From assembly GCA_021613535.1 (NCBI GenBank), contig CP075492.1, positions 6,820,001 through 6,884,000 on the forward strand: a DNA stretch of 64,000 nucleotides. The letters are read 5' to 3'. Source of the stretch: Adineta vaga. Its lineage: Eukaryota; Animalia; Rotifera. The position numbers and the translations under genes are program-made. The notes beneath the pieces were generated by a model. That model searched no databases and had not been told where the DNA came from. It saw only the letters and a list, made by a program, of their open reading frames with translations. Shown here one piece after another: positions 1 to 49,074 of the stretch (its first letter is position 1; each line of letters starts with the position of its first letter).

Positions 1-3000
1 ACATTTCAAAACTACACATCCAATGCCTTCACCACGCACAATTCCATTCGCTTTTGAATCAAAAGTCGCACAACGACTATCAACTGAAAGCATTTCTGCG
101 GCACACGTAATTAAATAAGGCTCTGGATGCAAAATTATATTTACTCCACCGGCTAAAGCAACTGAACATTTTTTATTCCTGAGTTTTTCAATTGCGAGAT
201 CAACAGCAACTAATGAAGAAGAACAAGCCGTGTCGACCGTCATACTAGCTCCATGAAGACCCAATGCAAACGAAATTCTATTTGCCGTTATTGATGGAGA
301 ATTGCCTGTTCCTGCGTAAGAATGTGGACTGTCTGTTACTAACATCCAATCATAATTCATTTGGCCTATAAAAACTCCAGTATTCGAATCTTTTAGTGCT
401 GATTTATCTAAGCCAGCGTTTAAAAAAGCTTCATATGCTACTTCAAGAATAAGCCTCTGTTGAGGATCCATCGTTCTAGCTTCAGCTAGAGGAATATTGA
501 AAAAGTCGTTATCGAACCACTCGACATCGTTTATGAAAGCGCCTTTTTTAGTGTAACTTTTGCCAATCGTCTTTGGATTAGGACTATAAATTTCATTAAT
601 ATCGAATCTTGATGAAGGAACTTCCGTAACACAATTCCGTTTTTCCATGAGCATTGTCCAAAACTCTTCTGCACTAGAAACTCCTCCAGGCAATCTACAG
701 GCCATACCAATGACAGCAATTGAAACATTGTGAGAAATACTTCTTTCACGTGGTTCTGAAGAAAAGTTTTGCCTTTTTCGTAATGAATCAATCGGATGAC
801 CAGTTATCATCTCTGCTATCTGTTTAACTGTCGGATGATTGAACACCAAAGTATATGGTAATTTTTTGTTAATCTCATCAGATAAGTTTTTGCTGAACCT
901 TATTGCAGTAAGTGAAGTCATGCCAAATTCTATGAGACTAGTTGTTGTTTTTAATGACTGTTGAGAATCATTCAGAAGCTCTTGAGCAATCCGAAGGATT
1001 TTAATTTCGAGCTCGTTTCTTTGTAAAGACTCAGTTTTCGTTGAAATTGGAACTTGATTAGGCACAAGTGTAGCTAATATAACGCGATCGATTTTACCGT
1101 TACTATTAAGCGGCATCGAATTTAAGACTATCCACGTTCGAGTCCACATGTAATCAGGCAGACATGAAACTATTCTATCGATAAGTTCTTGTTTCACTTG
1201 ATCCTCGGGTATTCCATCATCAACCTCGACAAAGCCGATAAGTCGCTGCACCGATCCTGGAACAAAGATAACCGCAACCTTTTTAACACAGTTAACTTGT
1301 TCGGCACAATTTTCAATTTCTGTTAATTCAACTCGATAGCCTCCTATTTTTATTTGAGCATCTCGACGGCGCCCAACTATTTGAATTTCACCATTCGACA
1401 AGTAATAGCCTACATCACCCGTGTTATATAAACGGCCGAGAACTCGATGATTAATAAATTTCTCGCTTGTTTTTTCCGAATTTCGAAAGTATCCACGCGC
1501 TAAACCAATTCCTCCAATATAAATTTCGCCTAAAACATTTGCAGGTCGATAAAGTCCACGTTCATCAAGTATATGCATAGTTTGATTTGATAATGGAACA
1601 CCGTAGGGCACTAAATATCCTTTCGGAGATTTGCACGGAAATATTTCATGGATATTCGACCAAATCGATGCTTCTGTTGCGCCACCTAGACATAAGATAC
1701 GAACAGTTGGATGCACTTGTTTCACTAAACGCACAAAATCCATTTTGATAGCGTCCCCGCTGAGCATAATAGATTTGAGAAATTGTACACTTCCGCTTTC
1801 ATTATTTACTGGAATAGTCTCTATTAGCATTTCAAAACTAGTCGGCACACTATTCCAAATAGTGATTTGATGTTTTTGTAGTTGTGACCACCAGTATTCT
1901 GGATCTCGAGTTGCATCTGATTTACAGATTACAACTTTACCACCAACACTTAGTATTCCAAAAATATCCCATACTGATAAATCGAAACTAAGAGAAGAAA
2001 TCGAGAAGACCGAATCATTAGCGCTGAGTCCTAAACGTTCGTTGATATCCAGACAAGTGTTCATTGCACCACGATGAGTTATTTCTACTCCTTTAGGAGT
2101 TCCTTCAGTTCCCGATGTAAATATGATATAAGCCAAACTATCCGGATCAACATGAATTAATTTAGTTTCAGTATCTTTTACGTCTTCTAATGATGCAATG
2201 GAAATTTGGATTATGATTTGATCTTCGGAGGACTTCCAGTTGCGCCCGGTGTTCATCACTTTACTGTGAGATAAAACGACGGGGGTTTCAGCTAATTTTA
2301 GGATAGTTGAAATCCGTAAGTCCGGATCGCTAGGATTTATCGGTAAATATGCAGCTCCTGCTCTTAAAATCCCCAAAATAGCTACTATTTGTTCCCATCC
2401 CTTTTCCATTACAACACCTACTAAGTCGCCTTGTTTAACATTATTTTTTTTCAGAACAGCCATTGCAGCTGAAACCATTTGATCTAGTTTTTTATAAGTG
2501 AATTGAACTTCTTGATCAATGACTGCAATATTTTCGGAGAACTGAACAGCGCTAGTTTCGAAACGTGTATGAAGAAGAAGATTATTGCCAAAATCTCTTT
2601 TGGTAGCATTGATTTCAAATCTTAAATTTTGGACGGATGCAGGAAGAGCTACTTCGATAGTTTCTTTCGGCCATGTGTCCTGAGATAAACTCTCGAGTAG
2701 CAATCGATAAGCTTCCATCATCTCTTTAATTAATACCGGACTGTAAAACATACTATCATAATCCCAATTAATTCGTAGTTCTTTTCCATCATTCGGTCCG
2801 ATTTCATAAACTTGATGATCAAGCCAAACTTGAGGAGTCATTGTTTGTTGGTATACAAGACATGGTACCAATCCATTAATATCAATGAATGGCATTACAT
2901 CGATTCCGAGTAATGATGTAAAAACAATAGGCAATATAAATGATGGGTTTGACATTTTTTCTCGGAGAAGTCGCATCACTTTGAGGCCACTCATATCCTT

Positions 3001-4218
3001 GTGGTTAAGAGCATTGGCCATGTCGGTATGAACTTTCTTTACCTTATCCTGAAAGTTTGAGCATTCAAGGATACTGAGTAGTAACACATTTGTAAAATCT
3101 CCAACTACCTCTGAAAAATTCTTTCCTCCGACATGTCGGTTTGTGATTGTGATGGTTAGAGTGAAGTTAGGCTCATCGGAATATGTTCTCAAAACTTCCG
3201 AAAATGCAGTAAGTATTAATGCGGTAGGTGTGATCTGAAGCTCTTGAGCTCTCATTTTCAAAGCTCGCCATTTCGTTGAATCCAAAGCCAAGCTTATTCG
3301 TTCAAAAGATGGCTCCAAAACAGTTTTCTCAAATTGAACTCGTGGAAGCTGTGGTGGTCCGGGCATGGAATCGAGGCGGTCGTGCCAGTATTTGCGTGAC
3401 GCAGCTGATTCTGATGATGATTGAATGTTAGTGCAATATTCGAAAAATGACAAACCATTATCATCAACAGATTTAATAAAACTTCCATTCTGAATATTAT
3501 TGTAAGCGTAAACTAAATCTCGGATAACGAGAAACGAACTTGCTGCATCCAAAAATATCATGTCTAGAAGAACATGTAGGCGAGTTTTGCCTTCGGGTAA
3601 AATAGTTGCTTCTATTTTCCAGAAACAGTTTGGTTCTTTCTTAAAAGAATTCATACATTCGAAACGACGCTTTTCCAAATTTATTTCAGATCGCTCGACA
3701 CGAATGCCTGAGAAAGAAACATTAAATTCTTCTACGTCACGGATTTCTTGATATTGGTCATCAACAATATGAGCTCTTAACATCGGATGCTTCTCGATCA
3801 CATAATGTATGGCTTGGTTGAACGCAGGAATATCGATTTGATCAAAATCGAATTCACTATAGACTTGACAGGGTAAAAAGCGATCCGATTCAAAACGTCC
3901 AATATAATAAGATTCTTGCATTTCCAAAAATTTTAATTGTTTGGTTTCGATTGTTTTCTTTTCATAAGCCACAGATTCTGTTCCGTTATTTTGCCATAAA
4001 TCGGAAATATTTTGGAGAGTCAAATTGTACAACTCTAAAAGTGAGGGTGAAGAATCGAGCAGGTTCTGCAGAATGGATATTTGAAGCGAGTCGATACCAA
4101 AATCAACAAGCTTTGTATTAAAACTGCCAAGAATTTCTTCTCGGCTTATTTTAAGTATTTCGGTAAGTTTATTGACAAGAACTGAGTTACCAGTTTGAGT
4201 CTTTTTTGAAGTGTTCAT
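1..4218 (-). CDS. Hybrid NRPS-PKS, T-Cy(heterocyclisation)-A(Cys)-T-KS, 3'-partial (continues beyond position 1)
   Basis: Manual translation from ATG 4218; the frame was spot-checked as identical at 4081, 3541, 2821, 901 and 1 (1406 codons). Motifs: carrier DFGIDSL (~4090); Cy FLEMQESYYIGR, KHPMLRA, DMIFLDAAS (DxxxxDxxS, ~3550), TPQVWLDHQ (~2825); A-domain YIIFTSGTEGTPKG, FDLSVWD, IWNSVP, LSGD, GGATEASIWS, LYNTGD, NGKIDR; second carrier EFGMTSL (~920); KS IAVIGMACRLPGG, MDPQQR, DTACSSSL (~225), RGEG. Confidence 0.95.
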   Translation of the reverse strand, partial: MNTSKKTQTGNSVLVNKLTEILKISREEILGSFNTKLVDFGIDSLQISILQNLLDSSPSLLELYNLTLQNISDLWQNNGTESVAYEKKTIETKQLKFLEMQESYYIGRFESDRFLPCQVYSEFDFDQIDIPAFNQAIHYVIEKHPMLRAHIVDDQYQEIRDVEEFNVSFSGIRVERSEINLEKRRFECMNSFKKEPNCFWKIEATILPEGKTRLHVLLDMIFLDAASSFLVIRDLVYAYNNIQNGSFIKSVDDNGLSFFEYCTNIQSSSESAASRKYWHDRLDSMPGPPQLPRVQFEKTVLEPSFERISLALDSTKWRALKMRAQELQITPTALILTAFSEVLRTYSDEPNFTLTITITNRHVGGKNFSEVVGDFTNVLLLSILECSNFQDKVKKVHTDMANALNHKDMSGLKVMRLLREKMSNPSFILPIVFTSLLGIDVMPFIDINGLVPCLVYQQTMTPQVWLDHQVYEIGPNDGKELRINWDYDSMFYSPVLIKEMMEAYRLLLESLSQDTWPKETIEVALPASVQNLRFEINATKRDFGNNLLLHTRFETSAVQFSENIAVIDQEVQFTYKKLDQMVSAAMAVLKKNNVKQGDLVGVVMEKGWEQIVAILGILRAGAAYLPINPSDPDLRISTILKLAETPVVLSHSKVMNTGRNWKSSEDQIIIQISIASLEDVKDTETKLIHVDPDSLAYIIFTSGTEGTPKGVEITHRGAMNTCLDINERLGLSANDSVFSISSLSFDLSVWDIFGILSVGGKVVICKSDATRDPEYWWSQLQKHQITIWNSVPTSFEMLIETIPVNNESGSVQFLKSIMLSGDAIKMDFVRLVKQVHPTVRILCLGGATEASIWSNIHEIFPCKSPKGYLVPYGVPLSNQTMHILDERGLYRPANVLGEIYIGGIGLARGYFRNSEKTSEKFINHRVLGRLYNTGDVGYYLSNGEIQIVGRRRDAQIKIGGYRVELTEIENCAEQVNCVKKVAVIFVPGSVQRLIGFVEVDDGIPEDQVKQELIDRIVSCLPDYMWTRTWIVLNSMPLNSNGKIDRVILATLVPNQVPISTKTESLQRNELEIKILRIAQELLNDSQQSLKTTTSLIEFGMTSLTAIRFSKNLSDEINKKLPYTLVFNHPTVKQIAEMITGHPIDSLRKRQNFSSEPRERSISHNVSIAVIGMACRLPGGVSSAEEFWTMLMEKRNCVTEVPSSRFDINEIYSPNPKTIGKSYTKKGAFINDVEWFDNDFFNIPLAEARTMDPQQRLILEVAYEAFLNAGLDKSALKDSNTGVFIGQMNYDWMLVTDSPHSYAGTGNSPSITANRISFALGLHGASMTVDTACSSSLVAVDLAIEKLRNKKCSVALAGGVNIILHPEPYLITCAAEMLSVDSRCATFDSKANGIVRGEGIGCVVLKC

Positions 4219-4527
4219 TTACAAAAATATTGTTACAATAAATTCAATTCTAGAAAATAAAAAGATTAATGTAAGATAATTATATTCTTGCAATACATTC
4301 GCTACAGTATGACTTAAAGATCCAAGAATACCCCTGTATAATGTTCTTTGAGGATCCAGCAGTTTGGGGATTTCCTTTGAAAGAAACTTCAGAGAATACC
4401 AATTAGAAAAACAAGCAGACAGTGATGAACCCAAAGGGAGGATTATGGTGATGGAGCCCCCTCCCCCCCAAATTAAAATATCATACTATTCGACAGAAGG
4501 AAACGACCAACCAAATAAAATTTCTGA

Positions 4528-5026
4528 TATATAGTATGAACAATAGAACTGAATTTAATGTTGAATAGATATATACGTATATCTATGAATAGTTTAATTT
4601 GACAGGAATTTTTGATCTTAATCGATCATTTTCAACTATAACACACCCTTTACAAATAGATAGAATCCATAACATGAGTAAAAGTAAGTAGATAGATCGG
4701 GATTAACATCAAGAATACCGGGTATTGGAGACAAAATTCAATTTTAAAGCCAATGGTCCTGAGTATTGATATTAAAGTTTGGTATTGATGTCGAGGTCAA
4801 GTTAAACAATAAAAACAAACAGAAATATTAAAAAATGCAGTTTTTCAACATCTAACTTCATTTCTTATTTCGCTATTAACATCTTTCTGCGTTGTAAAGA
4901 TCGTGCTGTAGTTGGAAATGATCGACTAAGATCAAAAACTCCTGTCAAATAAAGTATTCGTACATATATATATATACGTATATATCGATTCAACATCAAA
5001 TATAGTTCTATTGTTCATACAATATA
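4528..5026. mobile_element. Foldback/MITE-like element with ~115-bp imperfect terminal inverted repeats
   Basis: 4528-4642 (atagtatgaacaatagaact...ttgacaggaatttttgatcttaatcgatcattttcaactata) is the imperfect reverse complement of 4906-5026 (tgtagttggaaatgatcgactaagatcaaaaactcctgtcaa...agttctattgttcatacaata). No ORF. Confidence 0.7.
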
Positions 5027-5924
5027 CAGTAAAACCTCTCTAATGTGAACACCGTCGAGATCAACCACAAGTGTTCAGTATAACAGAGTGTTCGTAAAGG
5101 AGGGGTAAATAGAAAAATAGATCAGAACATCATTTTGGTGATTTAATCACAACTTTAAAGTGAATTAATTTAGTTTATTCAATTAAATAAACATTCATAT
5201 AATACTCTGAAAATAAATAAGGAGTTTTCCAGAACCTTTTTAGGGGTTCAGCCCGCTGGTAAAATTCAGAACCCTCCGGTATGACTAGTAGAACCCTTCG
5301 TGGTTTAGAATTATATGGCAGAACCTTTTGTAGTTCAGAATTGCTGCCCGAAACCGTTGTTGGTTCGTCATATGACAGACAGAACGTTTTCTGGTTCTGT
5401 GAATGGTGCAGAACCATAAAAGGTTTTGGAAGACTCCTTTTTTTCTTTCAGAGTAGATTCGTAACAGAAAAAGTAAAGTACTTAGTTACTTGGACGAGCT
5501 ATTAGGTCGAAAAAAATCCAAAATATACTTCTGTTTAGAATTGTTTATTCACGATAAGTTAAATTAAACCAGCTTCGTTTTGTTTAATCACATAAAATTT
5601 ATCTTCCAACGTAAGATCATTAGGAGTAGTCATGATTGAAACGACTAAATAAATTACACCGTAGTTATTACAAGTGTGTTTGTTTTATCATTGTTTTCTT
5701 CTCTTTCTCTCTTTATGTATATTAATTAAGTCAAGCTATACATCCAATAGGCTTTTCAATGCATGCCTCTTTCAGCCCAATCATACAACTTTATATGACG
5801 CCGCCCTCTACATATGTTCATATCAGCCAGGTCAACGTGTACAAATATGACTAAAAAAAGTTTTCACATTCGGAATTAACGGGTGTTCGTAAAGGAGGCG
5901 TGTTCATAAAGTGGGGTTCTACTG
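5027..5924. mobile_element. pogo/Tigger-like non-autonomous DNA transposon
   Basis: Left end TA|CAGTAAAACCTC and right end GGGGTTCTACTG match the CAGTnnAACC TIR type. The subterminal motif gtgttcgtaaaggagg occurs near both ends (~5088 and ~5883). Confidence 0.65.
5203..5455. mobile_element. Nested MITE (EnSpm/CMC-like) with AGAACC subrepeats
   Basis: TIR pair tactctgaaaataaataaggagttttccagaacctttt / aaaaggttttggaagactccttttttt ctttcagagta; several internal agaacc/ggttct motifs. Family assignment is tentative. Confidence 0.65.
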
Positions 5925-5927
5925 CAT

Positions 5928-6204
5928 CCCAGAACGACGGTTCCTGGGAGCGGTATTCCGGTTATTTTCGATGAAAACCTGCAGCATATCTATGTTTTCC
6001 GTGTTGGACACCATGGGAAAGTGCCTGTAATCCTGCTGAGGGAATCGGTGATCGTATCCGACTGTTGGTTACGGTAGGTTCTTGTCGGTTTCCAATAAAA
6101 CCGGGTGAATCCGATGATAGGATTTGGTCACCCGAATACGGCTTCCATGAAATCTCGGGAAGGTCACGAAACTGCACGGTTCCGGACCTAATAGTTTGAC
6201 TGGG
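5928..6204. mobile_element. GC-rich MITE with CCCAG...CTGGG termini
   Basis: at|CCCAG...CTGGG|at; GC content is higher than the flanks, with repeated ccgg/cgga motifs. A related fragment ending ctggg lies at ~8500-8639. Confidence 0.55.
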
Positions 6205-7757: not shown

Positions 7758-8992
7758 ACCTATTCTAGTTTATTCTCATTCGGTTTTATGATTGAGTTTC
7801 TCTAAACAGAGACTTACTTGTGATTGACGGTCGATGAAAATGAATGCTTTATTATTTCGAAACAAGTTGCTTTTATAGTTCGAAAAAAAAGAGTCTCATC
7901 TTGATGAAACTGGAAAGTAGAAGTAAATATTGACTCACTTCTGATCCATCACATGATGGGAAAGATGAAGTAGACATACACACTTAAATGCGAAAGAGCT
8001 CGGGAAAAAATAAATTCCCTAGAACGAAACTCGTCATTGTTTCAACAAAGAATGACTAATAAGTGCAAAATTCGATGTGATGATTTTGGAGTATTTCTGA
8101 TTCGCACACAAAACTGAGCTGCAGTAAAAACCGTTTTCAGGGTATAGGTGAGGGTGCAGATGCGATTATGGAGGTGACTGTAGGTAGCAAAAGCACATAC
8201 TCGCGCTCACACATACCCTTTCAGTCGAACCCAACTTAGAAGCACACTCACTCTCAATTTGGTAGGATTCGTAATATTACTGGCTTCTTACAGTATAATT
8301 AGTCTGCATTAGATACACATCGAATTTAATTAGCAAAAATATATATGGGATTCAATAGTATGTAGAGAAATGAGCATGGGAATCGTTTAGTTGTAGAAAA
8401 AATTCGGTCGTACATCGAGGAATCAGCTCGAAATATAACGAATACGTTCGACTGCATGAAGAAAGTATCGAATAATGCTACGATAAAATAGCGTTATCCG
8501 ACTGAAAGTGGTCCTTTGTGTAGGATCGAGACGTTTTCCGAAGTTTTACGATGACCGCATCTGGTCAGTTTTCATCATGTCATTGAAGTGGATCCGATGA
8601 TTTCTTGTCGGATCTAATAGTCGAAATGAATCACCTGGGTGTATGCGAATCAGAAATACTCCAAAATCATCACATCGAATTTTGCACTTATTAGTCATTC
8701 TTTGTTGAAACAATGACGAGTTTCGTTCTAGGGAATTTATTTTTTCCCGAGCTCTTTCGCATTTAAGTGTGTATGTCTACTTCATCTTTCCCATCATGTG
8801 ATGGATCAGAAGTGAGTCAATATTTACTTCTACTTTCCAGTTTCATCAAGATGAGACTCTTTTTTTTCGAACTATAAAAGCAACTTGTTTCGAAATAATA
8901 AAGCATTCATTTTCATCGACCGTCAATCACAAGTAAGTCTCTGTTTAGAGAAACTCAATCATAAAACCGAATGAGAATAAACTAGAATAGGT
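7758..8992. repeat. 353-bp near-perfect inverted repeat (7758-8110 / 8640-8992) with 529-bp spacer
   Basis: By eye the arms are reverse complements with one mismatch (8107/8643); no target-site duplication is visible. Confidence 0.92.
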
Positions 8993-9824: not shown

Positions 9825-10929
9825 TCAGAGAAGAATCTTTGTGACAATTTTTGATATAAGAGGCTCTAGCGCTAATGGAGCTACGCTTTTCTTTATTGCT
9901 TCATACCATGTATTGCATCGTTCTAACATAAAACAGTCACTTATATACCCTTCCGAAAGAGAAAAGGACAAATGATTACAAGGATAGAATACGGAATAAG
10001 GACGAAGTGCAAAGTAAGGACAAATATAAGCATGTGACGTTTTCCACTGATTCACCACATTCTGACTACTATCTAAGAATATTAAAAAGACAAAAATAAA
10101 GTTTGTTTTTGCTTCAGTTAATTTCGCTATATATTCATCTTCTTTTGATGATCCAGTAAAACGTTTGAACAATAAACCTTTGTTGAAATAATTTGATATT
10201 CCTGGTCGTTCTAGCATCACCTTTTCTAATTTGACCAAAGCTTGACGATCATCTTCACCAGGTAACATTTTTTCAGTATAATCTCGTGCAAGTGTAAATG
10301 CTTCGAAGACGAAATAATCAGCGATAGTTGGTTCTGTTTGATCATAGAAAAACGATGTTGAACTTTTTTTCAATAAATTATTCAATGCTTTCAAATCATT
10401 TGGAACCTTTTTTGTCATACGATTCATCGGGTTACTTTCAGTAACAAAATCAGCAGCACTCCAAATACATGTTAAAACATTTGAGATGATATCAGTATAT
10501 GCACATGAAACAACACCATCAATATATCCGTGTAGAACATCTTCTTCATCGATTGATGATGTTAATTTACCATATAAATCAAATTTTCGTGCTAAATATT
10601 GTCCTGTGAAAAATAAAAGAGATAAAAAATATCTAAAGTTTATAATCATATGTATTAAACGTACCAATAGGTAAAGTTTGGGCAAAAATATGTTTATCGT
10701 TCCAATGAAGAACAGGTAAATTGCGGAAAGGACCAGATATATTTTCATCAGCTTTATGTTGTACCCATGATTCGAGTGCCTTTTCAATTAATTCAAAATC
10801 TTCTTGATAATCGACATTTTTATTCGTTGCAGCAATATCTGCTAACATATATCGAACAGATTGAACGCGACCACGAGCATTCCAATAACGAAGTCGAATT
10901 TTGATAGGTTCTGATGTTTTTGTAGACAT
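9825..10929 (-). CDS. Glutathione S-transferase (2 exons; 3' end uncertain)
   Basis: N-terminal RYWNARGRVQSVRYML, F-x-NLP and AQTLPI motifs; intron 10604-10664; C-domain EPTIADYFVFE. GST-like sequence ends near 10100, but the frame stays open to 9825. Confidence 0.85.
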
Positions 10930-11214
10930 AATATTCACTGTCGAGGAAAAATAACAAATGTACACGTTTTATGTCGAGGAGTGTCATTTAAAGGATGAAA
11001 AAAAACATCGACAACAGCATGACTAGGCGTTTTTTCCTCTTATCCTCTAGTTTATCTTGTAAATAGGTCACTAACACAGTTATGAGTTATCAAGAGACCA
11101 TCTATTTACTGAATTTATAAGTATATATTTTTATTATCAAAAACAAAAAGATGTTCTGTTTCAATTAAAACGAATATTACAAAATTTGAATTTTTCTTCG
11201 ATGTTTTTTTTTTT

Positions 11215-14148
11215 CTATACATAAAGACTATCTGATGTAAATGCTGATGTATCTAGATTCGTAATTTGATGATGTTCAACTAAGGCATATAATTGTTCGA
11301 AACGTTTGAGACTATCTTGATAGGCTTGTTGTGATGAATGTATTGAATCTACCGATGCAGATGGTGGTCGAATAGTTAATTGTTGTACATGATCCGATGA
11401 AATATCCGATGATCCATAAACACCTTCATCGATATCAGGACCAATCAGTCGATTATTTAAATGTGTTAAATATCTTTGAACCTAAACAATTTCATGTTGA
11501 TAAGATTACTTTTCGATAGAGACGAGAAAAACGGTTTTAAATTACCTTTTCGGAATAATCAAAATCACTTTGATGGATACCGCTCGGCTTGATTACTTTC
11601 ATATCTACTGCTGCTGCTTGTTGAACTCCATATTGATAGACACGATTCGATGAATTCTTAAAGAACAAAGAAATTTAATCGTATTTTGTTTTCTTGAAGG
11701 AAAAGAAATTGAAGAGATTAATGTAGCATACAATCATTAATCTATATATAAACATACATATCGTCTATTCAAATGAAGCAAGGTCAAATAACAATAGAAA
11801 ATCAGTTATGGGTGTCAAAATAAGAAAACAATTCAATGTAAGAAACTTTCACTCTGATCATTTCGTTCGCACTATCCAAAAGACATGTGAACGTGATCAG
11901 TTATTATCATATTTGTTCGTATTACGTTTCCTTATTCCTATTCAAATACGTAAATTCTTTTGATCATCTAATAGGAAAAATGATCTAACTGTGTCTATTT
12001 GTTTTTTTTCTTCTCCCAATAGCAAATAGAGTAACTTACCAATCTATCGTCGAAAATTTCGATTGTTGTCTTTTGCGATGAACCTGTTCGTTCATTTGAA
12101 CTTGTTGTACTACCATTCGATGATGAATTGGGAATGGATTTGTTCGATGGATTTCTTTGTTTTCTTCGTAAGATAAAGGCGATTAGAAAACATACGGAAA
12201 TTAAGATTGCAGCAAGAAAAATAATAATAAAAAATGTAATAAATAAGACTAAAGTTGTATTTTCCATTGGCAAACTTTTTGTTAACATTGTTTCATTGAT
12301 TGAATGTATTCGAATGGGTATCGATATTGTATTCGTTAGATTTCCACTATCATAAACAGTGACATTAATGATAAATGTTCCTGGCATGTCAGGCATTGAA
12401 CGAAGAATTAATGTTCCATTATTAATTAGATTTATATCGAGCGATGGTGAAACGGTGTATGAATATGAGAAAATATTCGATTGAGAATGATCACGATCTT
12501 GAATGATGAATTGAGTAAGAATAAATGGAACATCAGTTGTTTCATAAGGAATTAATAATGATTGATTAACAGGTAATGAAGAAATAATCTCAGGTGGATT
12601 ATCATTACAATCTTCAATCAATAGATGAAGTAATGTAGATGAGGATAAAGATGGAATACCAAAATCAACACATTGTAAATGAATAACAACTGATTGTTCA
12701 CTTTCATAATCGAATGATGAAGAATTTGTTGTTTGTAATGAATATGCATTTGTTGTCAAATAGATTAGATTTAAACGAGTATCATTCAATGTACAACTTA
12801 CACGACCATTATCACCAGAATCTTCATCAGTAATATAAATATACAATAAAGGTGTATCTAGATAGATAGATTTATATTTCGAAAGTCATGTTTTCCAAAA
12901 CTATATCTTACGTACCTTTTAATGTACATTCTGGTAGATTGATCAAACGATTATTCATTTTAGTTCCATTAACTTCAGTTAATAAAACATCTGGAGAATG
13001 ATCATTAACATCTGTTACATCAATAATCAATGTTGCATAATTGGTCAGCTGTGGCACACCATTATCTTGTGCTATAAAATTGGTAATTGAACAAGTAAAA
13101 GAATCGATTAAAAAAATCTACCTTTTATTGTGAATGAATATGTTCGTATTTTTTCATAATCTAAAGATTTCTTCAAGTAGATTTCACCTGTCTGTTGATT
13201 GATGATAAATGTTGATGAATGATCATCGATTGAATACGTTATTCGAGCATTCTCATTCTCATCTCGATCAGTTGCATGAATTTTTAAAATAATCGAATCA
13301 ATTGGATAATTTTCTGGAAGTGATTTTTGATATATCATTTGTTCAAAGATCGGAGCATTATCATTAACACTAAGAATGAATTCTAAGTTTTTCAACGAAA
13401 ACAGTAACCAAAAATACTTGACTTACTCAGTTATCATAACTTCAATACTTTGTTCTCCCGATAATGCCGGTTGTCCACCATCATAAGCAATGAGTTTCAA
13501 TAAATAGCTTGATTTCATTTCACGATCTAACATTTCATTTAGTTTTAGAATGGGCTTCGAAGTTCTAATCAAACGAAATGGATTGATTCCGATTGGATAT
13601 AAATCATATTTTTGAATGGATAACAACCCATAATCATCATCAATTGCTGAATCTAATGGAATTTCATAACCAATCGGAACATTTTCTGCAATTGATAGTC
13701 TAATAATTGGTTGTTTAAATGTTGGTGAATGATCATTGATATCTATAAGTAGACAAACAGAAAAGCAAAGAAGAGGAAATTGAAGAATACATTATCAAAA
13801 ATATTTACCTTCAATGATAATTTGAATTGTTCGAATAGAAATATTACTTGGTGAAAATGTTTGTAAGAAACTCAAATTTACCAAACATTCCGAACAATTA
13901 CAAAGTTTTTTTTCACAAAATTCTTCTCGATCAATTACTTGATTTGTGGTATATAATGAGTGATCAGAATGAAGATTGAAATGCGTTTGAAATGAATAGG
14001 ATGATGGTAACCATTGAAGAATAGACGATGAAGAAATCGTTGGAAATAATAATGTATTTGATGGAAGTTCTTCATGAATATTTATTATTGAAGTGTTATT
14101 TTCAAAGGCAAATACGGAGATGAATAGAAGAAAATATAGGAGCAACAT
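11215..14148 (-). CDS. Protocadherin-like cell adhesion protein (multi-exon)
   Basis: Signal peptide; cadherin motifs IDREEFCE, DINDHSP, LDREM, VNDNAP, LDYE, DVNDHSP, DCNDNPP; TM helix at ~12170-12250; cytoplasmic tail ends SLYV-stop at 11215. Confidence 0.9.
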
Positions 14149-19937: not shown

Positions 19938-22508
19938 CTATGTTACTTTATTCCAGTTGATTTTCGTTGATTTCATCAATGTAATTAATCCAATAGGTAA
20001 ATTATCACTATCAATGAAGTCTAGCTGATTGAACGTACTTTTAATTTGTTCACCATAGTAACAAGCTAACCACAAAATACAATCATTACTGCCTGGATTT
20101 CGTCTTCCACGATGTCTAGGTGTGATTCCTTCTATTCCATCAAGAACATTTTGTATTTCATCATGGAAACTTTCAGCTATAATCGGCTCCGACATTTGAG
20201 TAATTCCTAACATTTCATGATACGTTTCGAACCAGTGCATATGGTGATTTTCACGATTTTTTACATATTCGTCAAAGGTGATTAACTTTCCATCTTGACG
20301 AATATACTCTTTTATCGCGTTACATCCTCGAGGTTTTACGGTTTGTTCATATTTTTCGACTAATTCAGCATACAATTCGACATCTTTCGCTGGTAACTGG
20401 TCGAAAGTAGTCATTACTGTGGAAAGTAACCAATCACGATAACTATACAAAGTAAGATAGATATGTTTTAGATCTAATCCACCTTGAACTAATGGCCAAT
20501 AGAACCAAGCTTCACAGAGTTGATCTGTTGAACAACTTGGAAATTGCTCTTGGATTCGTTTCGTAAGAATTATTAAAATATTTCCATCTGTTTCCGGAAA
20601 AATATATCGATGAATAAATTGGAATGTTTCAACCACCTGTTCGATATGGTATGTACCCAAAACATTGGCAAATCGACCAAAATTTCTCATAAAAAAAGAA
20701 ATATATTGATTATATATTTCAACCCATTCTAATATAGTCGATGCACTGATCAATCGAGTCTTCATTTCATCGAGAAATGGAACTACAGCTGGACGATCAA
20801 TGATAAAACGACCCGATGATTGTAAAATGAGAAGTCTCCATTTCAATTCTTTCAATGGCAGCACGGTACTACTTGTAGATTGAACAGTATGATTAGGGTT
20901 ATTCGATGGTTGAATTTGAACCGAACCACATTTTTCGGCATTGAATTTTAATCCCGACAATTGTACATATTCATTCATCAATAACCAAGCTTGTTCCACT
21001 TTAGCGGTATCGTAGTGAAAAAACCAAAAATCATCATGAAGACGATAATTAAAGATGCCTGTATTTCGATAGACGTAAAGATCCATACCAAAAATAAGTA
21101 ATTCAGAAAATAAGTAAGACATCGAATGTGAAATGGGCACACCACGTTGACGTTGACGAGGCACGTCTCCTGGTTTATAGTACACCGATTGTTTGAGAAA
21201 TCGATCAAAGAAATCGAGCCAGATTTGTGGCATGCCACACGATTCAAGAAAGATTTGAATAATTTCATGTGAAATCGATGGTCCAAACCATTCAAGATCA
21301 GTTGTAACTACAGTGAATGGTACAGTTGGTCTTAAAACTTGATGTAGTTGAATTTCAACATTAATTATATGAAATAGTTTCGTTTTTAAATCGAGAGAAG
21401 ATGTTTCTTCATAGGCAGCCAAGCCCGATTCACAATTACGTTCATCTGGTAATGACGCCATCCAATAATCATTCTGTTGCATTGTAAATCGTTCATTTTG
21501 AATGGAATTTGTTGCACATTTATTTCGTGCTTTTTTCGTTAATATTTGAAAAAGTTCTTTCAATTCCTTTTTAAAATGATAACTCCATTTCAAACCGATA
21601 TGTTCAAGAAAAATAGCAGTAAGAAAATCTTCTTCATAGTAACATCGATATTTTCCTGCTAAATTTCGACGAAAAATCCCACGAACACCTTCTGTTGTCC
21701 ATTTCCAATCGGTTAGCTCAGATATCATTAATGTTAATGATGATGCAAATTCATTCACAACATTGTCATCCAATTGTAGTTTTGTTAATAATCTTTTTCG
21801 ATATTCATCGAGTAAAGTTTGATTAAGTAGACTACTGATTGCTCGTCGAACAGCGTGCGACGAAACTTTTTCAGTCAGCAATATTTTACTGTATTTTTCT
21901 GTTTCGTGTTTAAACCGATGAAAAGCATGTTCAAATTTTTGTTCATCATCTACAGAAGAAAATAGTTTTGTCTGTAGAAAATGGCGCCATTGATCTAAAT
22001 CCAAATTTGGTCGTTCAAAAATAATTTTCTCTAAATGTTCATTAGTTAATAAACTATCTTTGGTTGTTGTCACTTCTAATGGTGTAAATTCATTTTGTTG
22101 TTTGGATAACCATTGTGACATGATAAGACCAAATAAATAGTTATATTCTGAACATTTTTTACCACCAACGATAACTTTTAGTAATTCTTGATATTAATTT
22201 TCAAGTAAATTTAATGACGTTGAAGTATTAGCTTTGGCAATAGTCATAAATGTATCGAAGTTTCTCAAATATCGTGCTTTACCATCTTCACCATACAAGC
22301 GTTCGATACTTTCACTTAACATTTGAATTTTATCGAAAAGTGAAATGGTAGAATCAGCTTTTTGTGACATAATTCGAGCATATTCTTCTTCGAATTTCAT
22401 TTTTCGTTGTTTAAAACGATCTAATTTCAATTTAGTCATCATACTTAATGCTTCACGATCAGGTGGTATAGAAATCACACTTCTATCTGTGTTCTTCATG
22501 GTAGACAT
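19938..22508 (-). pseudogene. rvt: rvt cellular reverse transcriptase interrupted by one in-frame TAA (22194-22196)
   Basis: ORFs 22194-22508 and 19938-22121 share a frame and are joined by 24 open codons (856 codons in total). rvt-type motifs RRNLAGKYRCYYEEDFLTAIFLEHIG, TDLEWFGPSISH, RGVPISHSMS and the catalytic YRLHDDFWF are present. No endonuclease, RNase H or LTRs. Confidence 0.88.
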
Positions 22509-45499: not shown

Positions 45500-46793
45500 T
45501 TATTTCATTGATCGTCGCCGAATAGCATTCGTCATACAATGTGCACCACCGCCACCCTCCAGTAGACCTCGAATAGGAATTGTTCCAACTTGACAGACAT
45601 TACTTTCAGTCATTTGTGTAACGATTCCTTTTTCACAATCACTACCTGCATAAGTCACCACATGATAATTATCAATGACAACTACATTGTGTCGACAATG
45701 ACGTTGTTCATAAACAGATGTTTCTTCATCTAATGCATCATAAAAGATCAATTCAGGATCATTCAATACTTTCCCAAGTGCTTCACGAACATTACAGCCA
45801 TGTGATATCCATTCAACATCACTATCTTTCTTTTCTAATGTGAATACTTCCATTGTTTCCTAATGATCCATGTAATGTAAATGCATGTTTACCAACTGAA
45901 CTTAGAACTGTGTCCAAATGCATATAACATCGATTAGGTGGAATGTTTATAGCAATCACTTGATGAAATAATCCTGTTCGAGCAACTGCTTCGATACCAG
46001 CACGATTTGTTCTTTCACTACATCCAATCATCACAACACCGTTACCAATATAAGCAACATCACCACCTTCGATTGTTGGCATATCATTATCATTATTGTT
46101 GTGATCTTTGCTTGCTCGCCATTCAACAAGTTTCAGTCCAGATGTTGACAAACATGGATGGTATTGAAAAATGATTTGTATAAGAAAGGGTTCGTTTCGT
46201 CGAGCTGGTTTATTCATTTGCCAGATGAAGACATTTTTTTCCATGATGGAAAAACCGTCACGCGTAAAGAGCAGATTTGGTAATGGTTGAATGACATAAT
46301 GATGATTGAGATGTTTGGTTTTGAGCAGTTCTCGTGCATGATCAGATGTACCGAGTTCATCTGGTGAACAGCTAACGCCAACAATAACATCTTGTGCTAA
46401 TTGTTCGGGTGTTCGATCAAGCAGCCACTGTCGAAGAGTTGATAATGCTTGTTGTTGATCCGGTTGATTGAGATGCGAATGAGCAATTAATCCATCAATC
46501 AGATGTTTTCGTGCTTCAGCACTAGCAGTGAGTGTTTCAAGCAAGAGATCAGTTAGATAAAGAACATGTACTCCATGTTGACGAAGATATTGTGAAAATA
46601 TATCGTGTGATTGATGTGTCTGATCGATGTTTGGAAGTGCATCGTAGAGCACATGATCGAGAGTATCTTCTGTTAGTCGAAGAAGTTCTCGACCAGGTCG
46701 ATGCATGATGACGATGTCGAGTTTTCCACATTCTGATTCGACACCAACACCTAGTTCATCGATTGTGTCTTTGGTTGATTTCGATATTGTCAT
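45500..46793 (-). pseudogene. arcA: Arginine deiminase, frameshifted copy (2-bp deletion at ~45860)
   Basis: ORFs 45822-46793 and 45500-45853 together match the neighbouring copy; TTA G--GAA ACA ATG versus TTA GCT GAA ATA ATG. Motifs FTRD, EGGD, MHLDT, GGAHCMT. Confidence 0.9.
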
Positions 46794-47775: not shown

Positions 47776-49074
47776 TTAGTTTATTGGACGTCGTCGTAAA
47801 GCATTCGTCATACAGTGTACTCCACCACCACCTTCTGATAAACCTTGAGAAGGTATTGTTCTAACACGACACACATTATTTTTTATCATTTGCTTAACGA
47901 TTCCTTTTTCACAATCACTACCTGCATAAGTCACCACATGATAATTATCAATGACAACCACATTGTGTCGACAATGACGTTGTTCATAAACAGATGTTTC
48001 TTCATCTAATGCATCATAAAAGATCAACTCAGGATCATTTAGTACTTTTCCAAGTGCTTCACGAACATTACAGCCATGTGATATCCATTCAACATCACTA
48101 TCTTTCTTTTCTAATGTGAATACTTCCATTATTTCAGCTAATGATCCATGTAATGTAAATGCATGTTTACCAACTGAACTTAGAACTGTGTCCAAATGCA
48201 TATAACATCGATTAGGTGGAATGTTTATCGCAATCACTCGATGAAATAATCCTGTTCGAGCAACTGCTTCGATACCAGCACGATTTGTTCTTTCACTACA
48301 TCCAATCATCACAACACCGTTACCAATATAAGCAACATCACCACCTTCGATTGTTGGCATATCGCTGTCATTATTGTTGTGATCTTTGCTTGCTCGCCAT
48401 TCAACGAGTTTCAGTCCTGATGTTGACAAACATGGATGGTATTGAAAAATGATTTGTATAAGAAAGGGTTCGTTTCGTCGAGCTGGCTTGTTCATTTGCC
48501 AAATGAAGACATTCTTTTCCATGATGGAAAAACCGTCACGCATAAAGAGTAGATTTGGTAATGGTTGAATGACATAATGATGATTGAGATGCTTGGTTTT
48601 GAGCAGTTCTCGTGCATGATCAGATGTACCGAGTTCATCTGATGAACAGCTAACGCCAACAATAACATCTTGTGCCAGTTGTTCGGGTGTCCGATCAAGT
48701 AGCCACTGTCGAAGAGTTGATAATGCTTGTTGTTGATCCGGTTGATTGAGATGAGAATGAGCAATTAATCCATCAATCAAATGTTTTCGTGCTTCAACAC
48801 TAGCAGTGAGCGTTTCAAGCAAGAGATCAGCTAGATAAAGAACATGCACTCCATGTTGACGAAGATATTGTGAAAAGATATCGTGTGATTGATGTGTCTG
48901 ATCGATGTTTGGAAGCGCATCGTAGAGCAGATGATGAAGATTATCTTTCGTTAGTCGAAGAAGTTCTCGACCAGGTCGATGCATGATGACGATGTCGAGT
49001 TTTCCACATTCTGATTCGACACCAACACCAAATTCATCGATTGTATCTTTGGTTGTTGAGGTTGACGCTACCAT
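47776..49074 (-). CDS. arcA: Arginine deiminase (amidinotransferase fold), intronless
   Basis: V-x-SE-x-GKL, HRPG-x-E, PLPNLLFMRD, IEGGD, G-x-SERT, MHLDT and the catalytic GGGVHCMT. Confidence 0.93.
   Translation of the reverse strand: MVASTSTTKDTIDEFGVGVESECGKLDIVIMHRPGRELLRLTKDNLHHLLYDALPNIDQTHQSHDIFSQYLRQHGVHVLYLADLLLETLTASVEARKHLIDGLIAHSHLNQPDQQQALSTLRQWLLDRTPEQLAQDVIVGVSCSSDELGTSDHARELLKTKHLNHHYVIQPLPNLLFMRDGFSIMEKNVFIWQMNKPARRNEPFLIQIIFQYHPCLSTSGLKLVEWRASKDHNNNDSDMPTIEGGDVAYIGNGVVMIGCSERTNRAGIEAVARTGLFHRVIAINIPPNRCYMHLDTVLSSVGKHAFTLHGSLAEIMEVFTLEKKDSDVEWISHGCNVREALGKVLNDPELIFYDALDEETSVYEQRHCRHNVVVIDNYHVVTYAGSDCEKGIVKQMIKNNVCRVRTIPSQGLSEGGGGVHCMTNALRRRPIN

What the first reader, a model, noticed from the sequence alone, without database searches (positions are those of the whole stretch)
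1..4218. Hidden thiazoline-type hybrid NRPS-PKS (T-Cy-A(Cys)-T-KS) in an animal-type genome, absent from the ORF track
Seen: an intronless frame of at least 1406 codons with a heterocyclisation domain (DMIFLDAAS instead of HHxxxDG; QESYYIGR; TPQVWLDHQ), an A domain whose hand-read pocket code is about DLWNMSLIWK, and a KS with intact DTACSSS. Established: DL[YF]N[LM]SLIWK is the Cys code, and carrier-Cy-A(Cys) starts yersiniabactin HMWP2 and pyochelin PchE; bdelloids are known to carry horizontally acquired NRPS/PKS genes. Inference: the enzyme condenses Cys onto an acyl/aryl starter, cyclises it to a thiazoline and extends it by polyketide chemistry, giving a metallophore or antimicrobial heterocycle made by the animal. 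No Ox or MT insertion is seen between A8 and A9, so a thiazole would need an oxidase elsewhere.
Basis: partly seen in the sequence, partly recalled or inferred. Interest (0 to 1): 0.9.

Follow-up and report, generated by a model that had tools for sequence, protein, structure and literature searches.

The report
Rotifer's borrowed thiazoline-polyketide assembly line
A tiny animal (the bdelloid rotifer Adineta vaga) carries an intact bacterial-type enzyme assembly line, already published as a fungus-induced foreign gene, whose first module should build a sulfur ring from cysteine; it belongs to a widespread bacterial gene cluster for which I found no described product, and whose companion genes hint at a DNA-damaging toxin.

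Summary
Observation confirmed: 4218→1 (−) is an unbroken 1406-codon T-Cy-A-T-KS frame cut by the window edge. It is not undiscovered: it matches AVAG|g23567 of Adineta vaga (Nowell et al. 2024, PMC11258130), published as an intronless, fungus-induced horizontal acquisition. That text never mentions cyclisation; its SeMPI run drew a linear Cys. The Cy reading holds: DxxxxDxxS and the Thr/Asp/Gln catalytic set are kept, the best solved matches are all Cy domains, and the code is DLWNMSLIWK (Cys). New here: the gene is the deepest sampled branch of a bacterial cluster (Myxococcales, Serratia, Vibrio, Acinetobacter, Bacillus, Chlamydiae) built T-Cy-A-T-KS-(AT)-KR-ACP-TE-[KS-DH-KR-ACP]n-KS-AT-KR-ACP-FMO-FSH1, for which I found no described product. 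Its companion gene mepB came along into the rotifer, and dinB travels with it in several bacteria. No aryl-loading or iron-uptake genes are conserved, so the HMWP2/PchE metallophore analogy is weak; a toxic thiazoline-polyene, possibly DNA-damaging, fits better. The insert sits between two copies of a 3.2-kb GST–cadherin block. The scan noted this gene from the adjacent window, and Cy-A(Cys)-Ox modules in other NRPSs of this genome.

The parts
1..4218 (-). 5' 1406 codons of one intronless NRPS-PKS ORF (AVAG|g23567, with the 3' part probably g23566); continues left of the window (6,630 aa in the Av13 scaffold; about 7,165 codons in this assembly per an unchecked scan note)
3994..4206 (-). N-terminal carrier T1 (GIDSL; Ser44 at 4087-4089), donor of the unknown starter; Ser kept in 11 of 11 full-length family members
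2665..3933 (-). Heterocyclisation (Cy) domain: D219/D224/S227, T434, T461-P-Q, D467, Q469, Y104, R108
1075..2574 (-). Adenylation domain, code DLWNMSLIWK (Cys), no Ox or MT insertion; A3 loop TSGTEG where the family has TSGSTG
805..1002 (-). Carrier T2 (GMTSL, Ser1102)
1..723 (-). KS1 N-terminal part, active Cys1332 (DTACSSS); both His motifs lie beyond the window and are intact in the published protein
4528..6000 (.). Host dispersed repeats and nested inverted repeats upstream of the ATG, reached by the same contig as the ORF
10131..13360 (-). Right copy of a ~3.2-kb GST + cadherin-3' block; its second copy lies on the far side of mepB + NRPS-PKS in the Av13 scaffold

Best explanation
This is the start of a single, intact, horizontally acquired NRPS-PKS gene of A. 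vaga. SHOWN: domain order, catalytic residues, Cys code, linkage to host DNA, membership of a bacterial cluster family, and (published) induction of about 5.7-fold 24 h after fungal infection. INFERRED: the A domain loads L-Cys on T2. The Cy domain condenses it with an acyl group on T1 and cyclodehydrates it to a 2-acyl-derived thiazoline. The starter is most likely a small aliphatic acyl put on by the gene's single malonyl AT or by a PPTase, since no loading enzyme is conserved. Four malonyl extensions follow, three in AT-less modules served by that AT: KS-KR-ACP-TE, two KS-DH-KR-ACP, then KS-AT-KR-ACP. The internal TE probably processes the first beta-hydroxyl (O-acylation or elimination to an alkene). 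A BVMO/FMO-like domain plus an FSH1-like hydrolase with a Cys nucleophile oxidise and release the chain. The product is a thiazoline-polyene toxin used in defence. The co-transferred MepB, and DinB in bacterial copies, are self-protection genes, which points to DNA as a possible target.
For: Cy: the top 8 PDB sequence hits are all Cy domains (EpoB 6.6e-54, HMWP2 2e-52, BmdB 1e-41) against 1e-10 for the best ordinary C domain. HMWP2-Cy2 dyad T1830/D1862 and helper Q1864 map to T434/D467/Q469, invariant in 12 of 12 family rows. Cys: code kept across the family; SeMPI's top call is Cys at 0.25. Family: 41-46% identity over Cy-A against 38% or less for other Cys-Cy modules; clade support 100; same internal TE and FMO-FSH1 end. 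mepB lies in 6 of 17 family loci (Bacillus, Serratia, Xanthomonas, Chlamydiae, an unassigned contig; many loci are cut before its usual place) and in 0 of 76 other Cy-A loci; dinB plus a hydrolase lies in 6 of 17 (three lineages) against dinB in 1 of 76. A MepB-like ORF follows the rotifer gene (read by eye). Expression: T24 log2FC 2.50, -log Padj 14.1, TMM 0.081 to 0.464; four exact 151-nt pieces in a probable RNA run.
Against: No product is known for any member, and no activity was measured. Expression is low. The starter is unidentified. The rotifer's C-terminal domains were read by eye from supplement text, not scanned. The FMO-like domain lacks the His of the FxGxxxH fingerprint, so its chemistry is open. 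Co-occurrence counts are not independent (related strains). No dinB was seen beside the rotifer copy, and MepB's function is unproven. Several B. subtilis copies are fragmented, so the cluster can decay.
Confidence: 0.62

Rival explanations
1. Permuted order: the C-terminal PKS half builds a polyene acyl chain first, the Cys-nucleophile FSH1-like domain transfers it to T1, and Cy-A-T-KS-KR-ACP-TE is the chemically last segment, with the internal TE releasing an acyl-thiazoline beta-hydroxy acid.
For: It would explain both the absence of any loader for T1 and a TE with intact GxSxG right after module 1 in nearly all long members. The TE's closest solved relatives are release-type FAS TEs. The FSH1-like domain has Cys (GFCEG) in all copies seen.
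Against: No KSQ or other loader for KS2 (DTACSS intact). Some B. subtilis copies lack the TE yet keep KS-KR-ACP-FMO-FSH1, although these may be decayed. I know no precedent for such back-transfer.
Confidence: 0.15
2. Metallophore of the yersiniabactin/pyochelin type: an aryl starter on T1, with the thiazoline as a metal ligand.
For: T-Cy-A-T order as in PchE (structure match); enterobactin genes lie near one Serratia copy.
Against: Only one Cy; no aryl-AMP ligase, salicylate synthase, receptor or iron transporter in complete clusters; other Serratia copies sit elsewhere. The companions are mepB, dinB and hydrolases. The published induction is by a pathogen.
Confidence: 0.1
3. A recently captured passenger: intact and weakly transcribed, but making no useful product in the rotifer.
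For: Low TMM; no ortholog in A. ricciae; no variation among lab-line runs, so selection cannot be measured.
Against: About 20 kb without a stop, all catalytic residues kept, regulated up in infection and down in desiccation, and the companion mepB is retained with an added basic N-terminus.
Confidence: 0.12
4. Contaminant or chimeric join.
For: Higher GC than the flanks; no introns.
Against: Same sequence and spacing in two assemblies (5,605 against 5,607 bp to the GST ORF). Identical contig in three studies, running into host repeats. 16 runs from 6 studies hold the stretch or a part of it.
Confidence: 0.01

Closest known systems
AVAG|g23567 / Av20 cluster 3.4 (Nowell et al. 2024, PMC11258130)
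   Same: It is this locus: the same protein over the part compared, the same neighbours; published as intronless, GC-rich, fungus-induced, without ortholog in A. ricciae.
   Different: The paper treats the domain as a plain C domain and predicts a small linear alpiniamide-like polyketide. Its text gives no Cy/thiazoline reading, family assignment, mepB link or flanking duplication. Supplementary Data 9 has 'heterocyclization' BLAST tags for chromosome 1; the file is truncated, so I could not see whether cluster 3.4 has one.
Orphan bacterial T-Cy-A-T-KS...TE...FMO-FSH1 + mepB cluster (Corallococcus, Myxococcus stipitatus, Serratia, Vibrio, Photobacterium, Acinetobacter, Bacillus subtilis, Ca. 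Neptunochlamydia)
   Same: Same domain order, Cys code, internal TE, FMO-FSH1 end and mepB; 41-46% identity over Cy-A and 62-66% over KS1.
   Different: The rotifer has it all in one ORF (bacteria usually split before the last KR), lacks the module-1 AT that most bacteria have, keeps more canonical Cy residues (R108, QVWLD), and branches outside all sampled bacteria. No dinB or hydrolase gene was seen beside it.
PchE / HMWP2 (pyochelin, yersiniabactin)
   Same: Carrier-Cy-A(Cys)-carrier start; same Cy catalytic set.
   Different: No aryl loading, no E/MT insertion, one Cy only, long PKS tail, no iron-uptake genes.
EpoB, curacin CurF-G, myxothiazol MtaD (acyl-thiazol(in)e handed to a PKS; the last two from my own knowledge)
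   Same: Cy-A(Cys)-T feeding a type I KS; EpoB is the best solved match of the Cy domain.
   Different: No upstream PKS to supply the starter, no Ox domain, an internal TE, and oxidative FMO-FSH1 termination.
PKS-associated Baeyer-Villiger oxygenases OocK/PedG (PMC6174933)
   Same: Flavin monooxygenase of BVMO fold tied to a PKS with AT-less modules.
   Different: Here it is fused at the C-terminus to an FSH1-like Cys hydrolase and lacks the fingerprint His; clade membership was not tested.

Membership tests
NRPS heterocyclisation (Cy) domain | DxxxxDxxS in place of HHxxxDG | tested here: met
   D219, D224, S227
NRPS heterocyclisation (Cy) domain | Catalytic Thr-Asp dyad and helper Gln | tested here: met
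   T434, D467, Q469 align with EpoB, HMWP2 and BmdB
NRPS heterocyclisation (Cy) domain | Closer to Cy than to LCL/DCL C domains | tested here: met
   E 1e-34 to 1e-54 for 8 Cy entries against 1e-10 for PvdL
NRPS heterocyclisation (Cy) domain | Cyclodehydration activity | not testable with these tools
   needs an in vitro assay
Cys-activating A domain | Pocket code DL(Y/F/W)N(L/M)SLIWK | tested here: met
   DLWNMSLIWK, conserved in 12 rows; SeMPI top call Cys 0.25
Thiazole-forming module (Cy-A-Ox) | Embedded FMN oxidase | tested here: not met
   no insertion in the A domain, no nitroreductase hit
Yersiniabactin/pyochelin siderophore NRPS | Aryl-acid synthesis and aryl-AMP ligase in the cluster | tested here: not met
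   absent from complete family clusters and from the rotifer flanks
Yersiniabactin/pyochelin siderophore NRPS | Two or more Cy domains and iron-uptake genes | tested here: not met
   one Cy; no receptor or transporter
Orphan Cy...TE...FMO-FSH1/mepB cluster | Cy-A falls in the family clade | tested here: met
   support 100 in three trees
Orphan Cy...TE...FMO-FSH1/mepB cluster | Internal TE, terminal FMO-FSH1(Cys), adjacent mepB | tested here: met
   read by eye in the published protein; scanned in bacterial members
Myxofacycline iso cluster | FAAL start, A-less NRPS with aminotransferase | tested here: not met
Caerulomycin CaeA2 | KS-AT-ACP before Cy-A-PCP-Ct, with a trans flavoprotein | tested here: not met
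   opposite order, no Ct
Genotoxin cluster with DNA-repair self-resistance | DNA repair/tolerance genes co-mobile with the cluster | tested here: inconclusive
   dinB in three lineages and mepB in five plus the rotifer; MepB function unproven; counts not independent
Genotoxin cluster with DNA-repair self-resistance | Product damages DNA | not testable with these tools
   product unknown

The most novel reading that the evidence does not exclude
An animal took up a whole bacterial genotoxin cassette, the assembly line plus its self-protection gene, added a nuclear-targeting-like extension to the protector (MepB), and deploys an undescribed DNA-damaging thiazoline-polyene against a fungal pathogen. 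The same unknown compound class is encoded by Serratia, Vibrio, Acinetobacter, Bacillus, myxobacteria and chlamydiae.
Probability: 0.2. Interest if true: 0.9.

Novelty: new variant of a known kind. Interest (0 to 1): 0.58.

Why it matters
The locus and its HGT are published, so the headline (an animal with an NRPS-PKS) is not new. The added value is a testable chemistry. What bdelloid NRPS/PKS genes actually make is an open question, and bdelloids lack genetics. This gene has orthologous clusters in culturable, tractable bacteria, so the product can be found there and then sought in infected rotifers. The cluster itself is a widespread, mobile orphan with unusual logic (unloaded N-terminal carrier, internal TE, shared AT, FMO-FSH1 release) and DNA-tolerance companions, which makes it a good target for natural-product discovery.

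Tried and rejected
The search of 50% representatives was swamped by multi-module NRPSs and gave nothing specific. Myxofacycline and caerulomycin clusters were checked and rejected on architecture. Paper searches for a described product of the family found none; the library lacks most subscription journals, so this is not proof. A myxobacterial donor, suggested by the paper's best hit, is disfavoured only weakly (AU p = 0.045); tests for Chlamydiae or the AT-less Logan protein as sister did not finish. The full-length rotifer protein exists only as supplement text without a reference, so I did not enter it into any tool; its C-terminal domains were read by eye. Contig depth was not used for copy number.
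Full report
Observation. Six-frame translation shows one stop-free frame of 1406 codons from ATG 4218 to base 1 on the minus strand, with TAA immediately upstream. It is absent from the ORF list because that tool drops ORFs that leave the window. Pfam gives carrier, condensation, AMP-binding, carrier and KS in that order, and a structure model shows a helical carrier at residues 5-74. The ORF is 37.6% GC (GC3 29%) against about 30% for most of the window.

Identity. Short peptide searches in the supplement of Nowell et al. 2024 (PMC11258130) found the same protein: ORF 16 of Adineta vaga scaffold AVAG00146, 17,555-37,447, minus strand, 19,893 bp. By eye it matches the window translation. This is AVAG|g23567, cluster 3.4 on chromosome 3. 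The authors exclude contamination, note few or no introns and a GC peak, find no ortholog in A. ricciae and call it a recent acquisition. It is induced 24 h after fungal infection (log2FC 2.50, -log Padj 14.1, TMM 0.081 to 0.464) and is among genes lowered on entering desiccation. Their main text never uses 'cyclization' or 'thiazol'. SeMPI chose Cys at 0.25 and drew it uncyclised. My own check of linkage: 16 runs from 6 studies hold the stretch or a part of it. Three runs from three studies have the same 9,416-bp contig over window 1-5051 with no differences, ending in host repeats on the right and 4,365 bp beyond the window on the left. That left end is about where a duplicated DH-KR block begins in the published protein. 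A probable RNA run has four exact 151-nt pieces inside the ORF (RNA is a guess).

Cy and A domains. The eight best solved relatives of residues 90-523 are all Cy domains (EpoB, HMWP2, BmdB, PchE, FmoA3); ordinary C domains score at least 24 orders of magnitude lower. The HMWP2-Cy2 dyad T1830/D1862 and helper Q1864 (PMC9547227) correspond to T434/D467/Q469, and DxxxxDxxS is D219/D224/S227. The pocket reads DLWNMSLIWK, the Cys code by established rules, and there is no Ox or MT insertion. So a thiazoline, not a thiazole, is the expected product of this step. This is inference; no activity was measured.

Family. Homolog searches found proteins at 41-46% identity over Cy-A, clearly above other Cys-Cy modules at 38% or less. 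They come from Corallococcus, Myxococcus stipitatus, Serratia, Vibrio, Photobacterium (plasmid), Acinetobacter, Bacillus subtilis, Halalkalibacter, a Xanthomonas MAG and Ca. Neptunochlamydia. They share T-Cy-A-T-KS-(AT)-KR-ACP-TE-[KS-DH-KR-ACP]n-KS-AT-KR-ACP-FMO-FSH1 with varying n. The published rotifer protein, read by eye, has the same plan in one ORF, with a single AT in the last module, an internal TE with GLSFG, and an FSH1-like end with GFCEG. In three trees the rotifer joins the family with support 100 and is sister to all sampled bacterial members with support 98-99. Forcing it with the myxobacterial group is only weakly rejected (p-AU 0.045). The donor lineage is therefore unsampled, and the distance to known bacteria says nothing about the age of the transfer.

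Companions. mepB lies beside the cluster in Bacillus, Serratia, Xanthomonas, Neptunochlamydia (two copies) and a 33%-GC contig, and in none of 76 other Cy-A loci. dinB plus an alpha/beta hydrolase lies beside it in Serratia (at different chromosomal sites), V. parahaemolyticus and a V. vulnificus-like contig, against one dinB in 76 other loci. A MepB-like ORF with a lysine-rich N-terminal extension follows the rotifer gene; its bacterial counterpart matches S. aureus MepB, PDB 4lqe. That MepB has an endonuclease-like fold is from my own knowledge. No aryl-loading or iron-uptake gene is conserved. DNA-repair self-resistance is a known mark of genotoxin clusters (PMC9040887, abstract). I take these companions as a hint, not a result: counts include related strains, and MepB's role is unproven.

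Mechanism. Most likely, Cys is loaded on T2, condensed with a small acyl group on T1 and cyclised. Four malonyl extensions give a thiazoline-polyene. The internal TE acts on the first beta-hydroxyl, as internal TEs do in oocydin and FR901464 (own knowledge). The BVMO-like domain (compare OocK, PMC6174933) and the Cys hydrolase oxidise and release the chain. The main rival keeps the thiazoline chemistry but reverses the order, with the C-terminal half supplying T1 and the TE releasing. A siderophore is less likely, and so is a passenger gene.

Insertion site. mepB and the NRPS-PKS, about 30 kb in all, lie between two direct copies of a ~3.2-kb block of a GST gene plus the 3' part of a cadherin gene. 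The right copy is window ~10,131-13,360; the left copy is in the Av13 scaffold. The core looks near-identical, though Av13 has a gap in the right copy, so some identity may come from collapse. Both edges trail off through diverged, partly synonymous homology (read by eye). This fits an older duplication homogenised by gene conversion, or an ends-in integration of DNA carrying paralogous ends. It means the repeat cannot simply be read as a fresh target duplication that dates the transfer.

Verdict. The locus is already published, and other notes of this scan report Cy-A(Cys)-Ox modules in further A. vaga NRPSs (unchecked), so a Cy domain in this animal is not unique. The new part is the thiazoline reading, the assignment to an orphan mobile bacterial family with culturable members, and the co-transferred mepB. 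Interest 0.58.

Noticed in passing
window 10131-13360 and Av13 scaffold ~10.0-13.3 kb: Direct ~3.2-kb duplication (GST + cadherin 3' part) on both sides of mepB + NRPS-PKS. The right GST lacks its normal last codons and stop; the left cadherin lacks its 5' exons; the edges keep diverged homology.
   Followed up: partly
window 4250-4268 (-): Pyrimidine-rich tract plus TAG 31 nt upstream of the ATG, like a splice or trans-splice acceptor; no Shine-Dalgarno was called in the published run. Chance in AT-rich DNA not tested.
   Followed up: no
window 7758-8110 and 8640-8992: Perfect 353-nt inverted repeat, arms 529 nt apart; probably a young non-autonomous element.
   Followed up: no
window 4528-5026: Nested inverted repeats (59 and 62 nt); dispersed host repeats at 5025-5460 and 5930-6000.
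   Followed up: partly
window 19938-22508 (-): rvt-type reverse transcriptase (name from a scan note), a 727-aa ORF here but split into several ORFs with many substitutions in the Av13 scaffold. From ~16 kb rightwards the two assemblies seem to show different alleles.
   Followed up: partly
window 45822-46793 and 47776-49074 (-): Two arginine deiminase-like ORFs at 39% GC, possibly another foreign acquisition.
   Followed up: no
window 1658-1875: Loose ends and a joint inside the A domain suggest other, related Cys-type A domains elsewhere in the genome.
   Followed up: no
L002, L003 (Bacillus subtilis): Cluster inserted between glmS and ndhF in L002; fragmented, AT-less and shortened in several strains.
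   Followed up: partly
L009 vs L010 (Serratia): The number of near-identical KS-DH-KR-ACP modules differs between strains (module gain or loss by recombination).
   Followed up: partly
L092:4872-8659 (Corallococcus): Tyr-DNA phosphodiesterase and SNF2 helicase genes directly upstream of the cluster.
   Followed up: no
L011 (33% GC Logan contig): Compact complete cluster with PPTase, mepB, a reduced NRPS-PKS, FMO-FSH1 and a metallo-beta-lactamase-fold gene; very long branch.
   Followed up: partly
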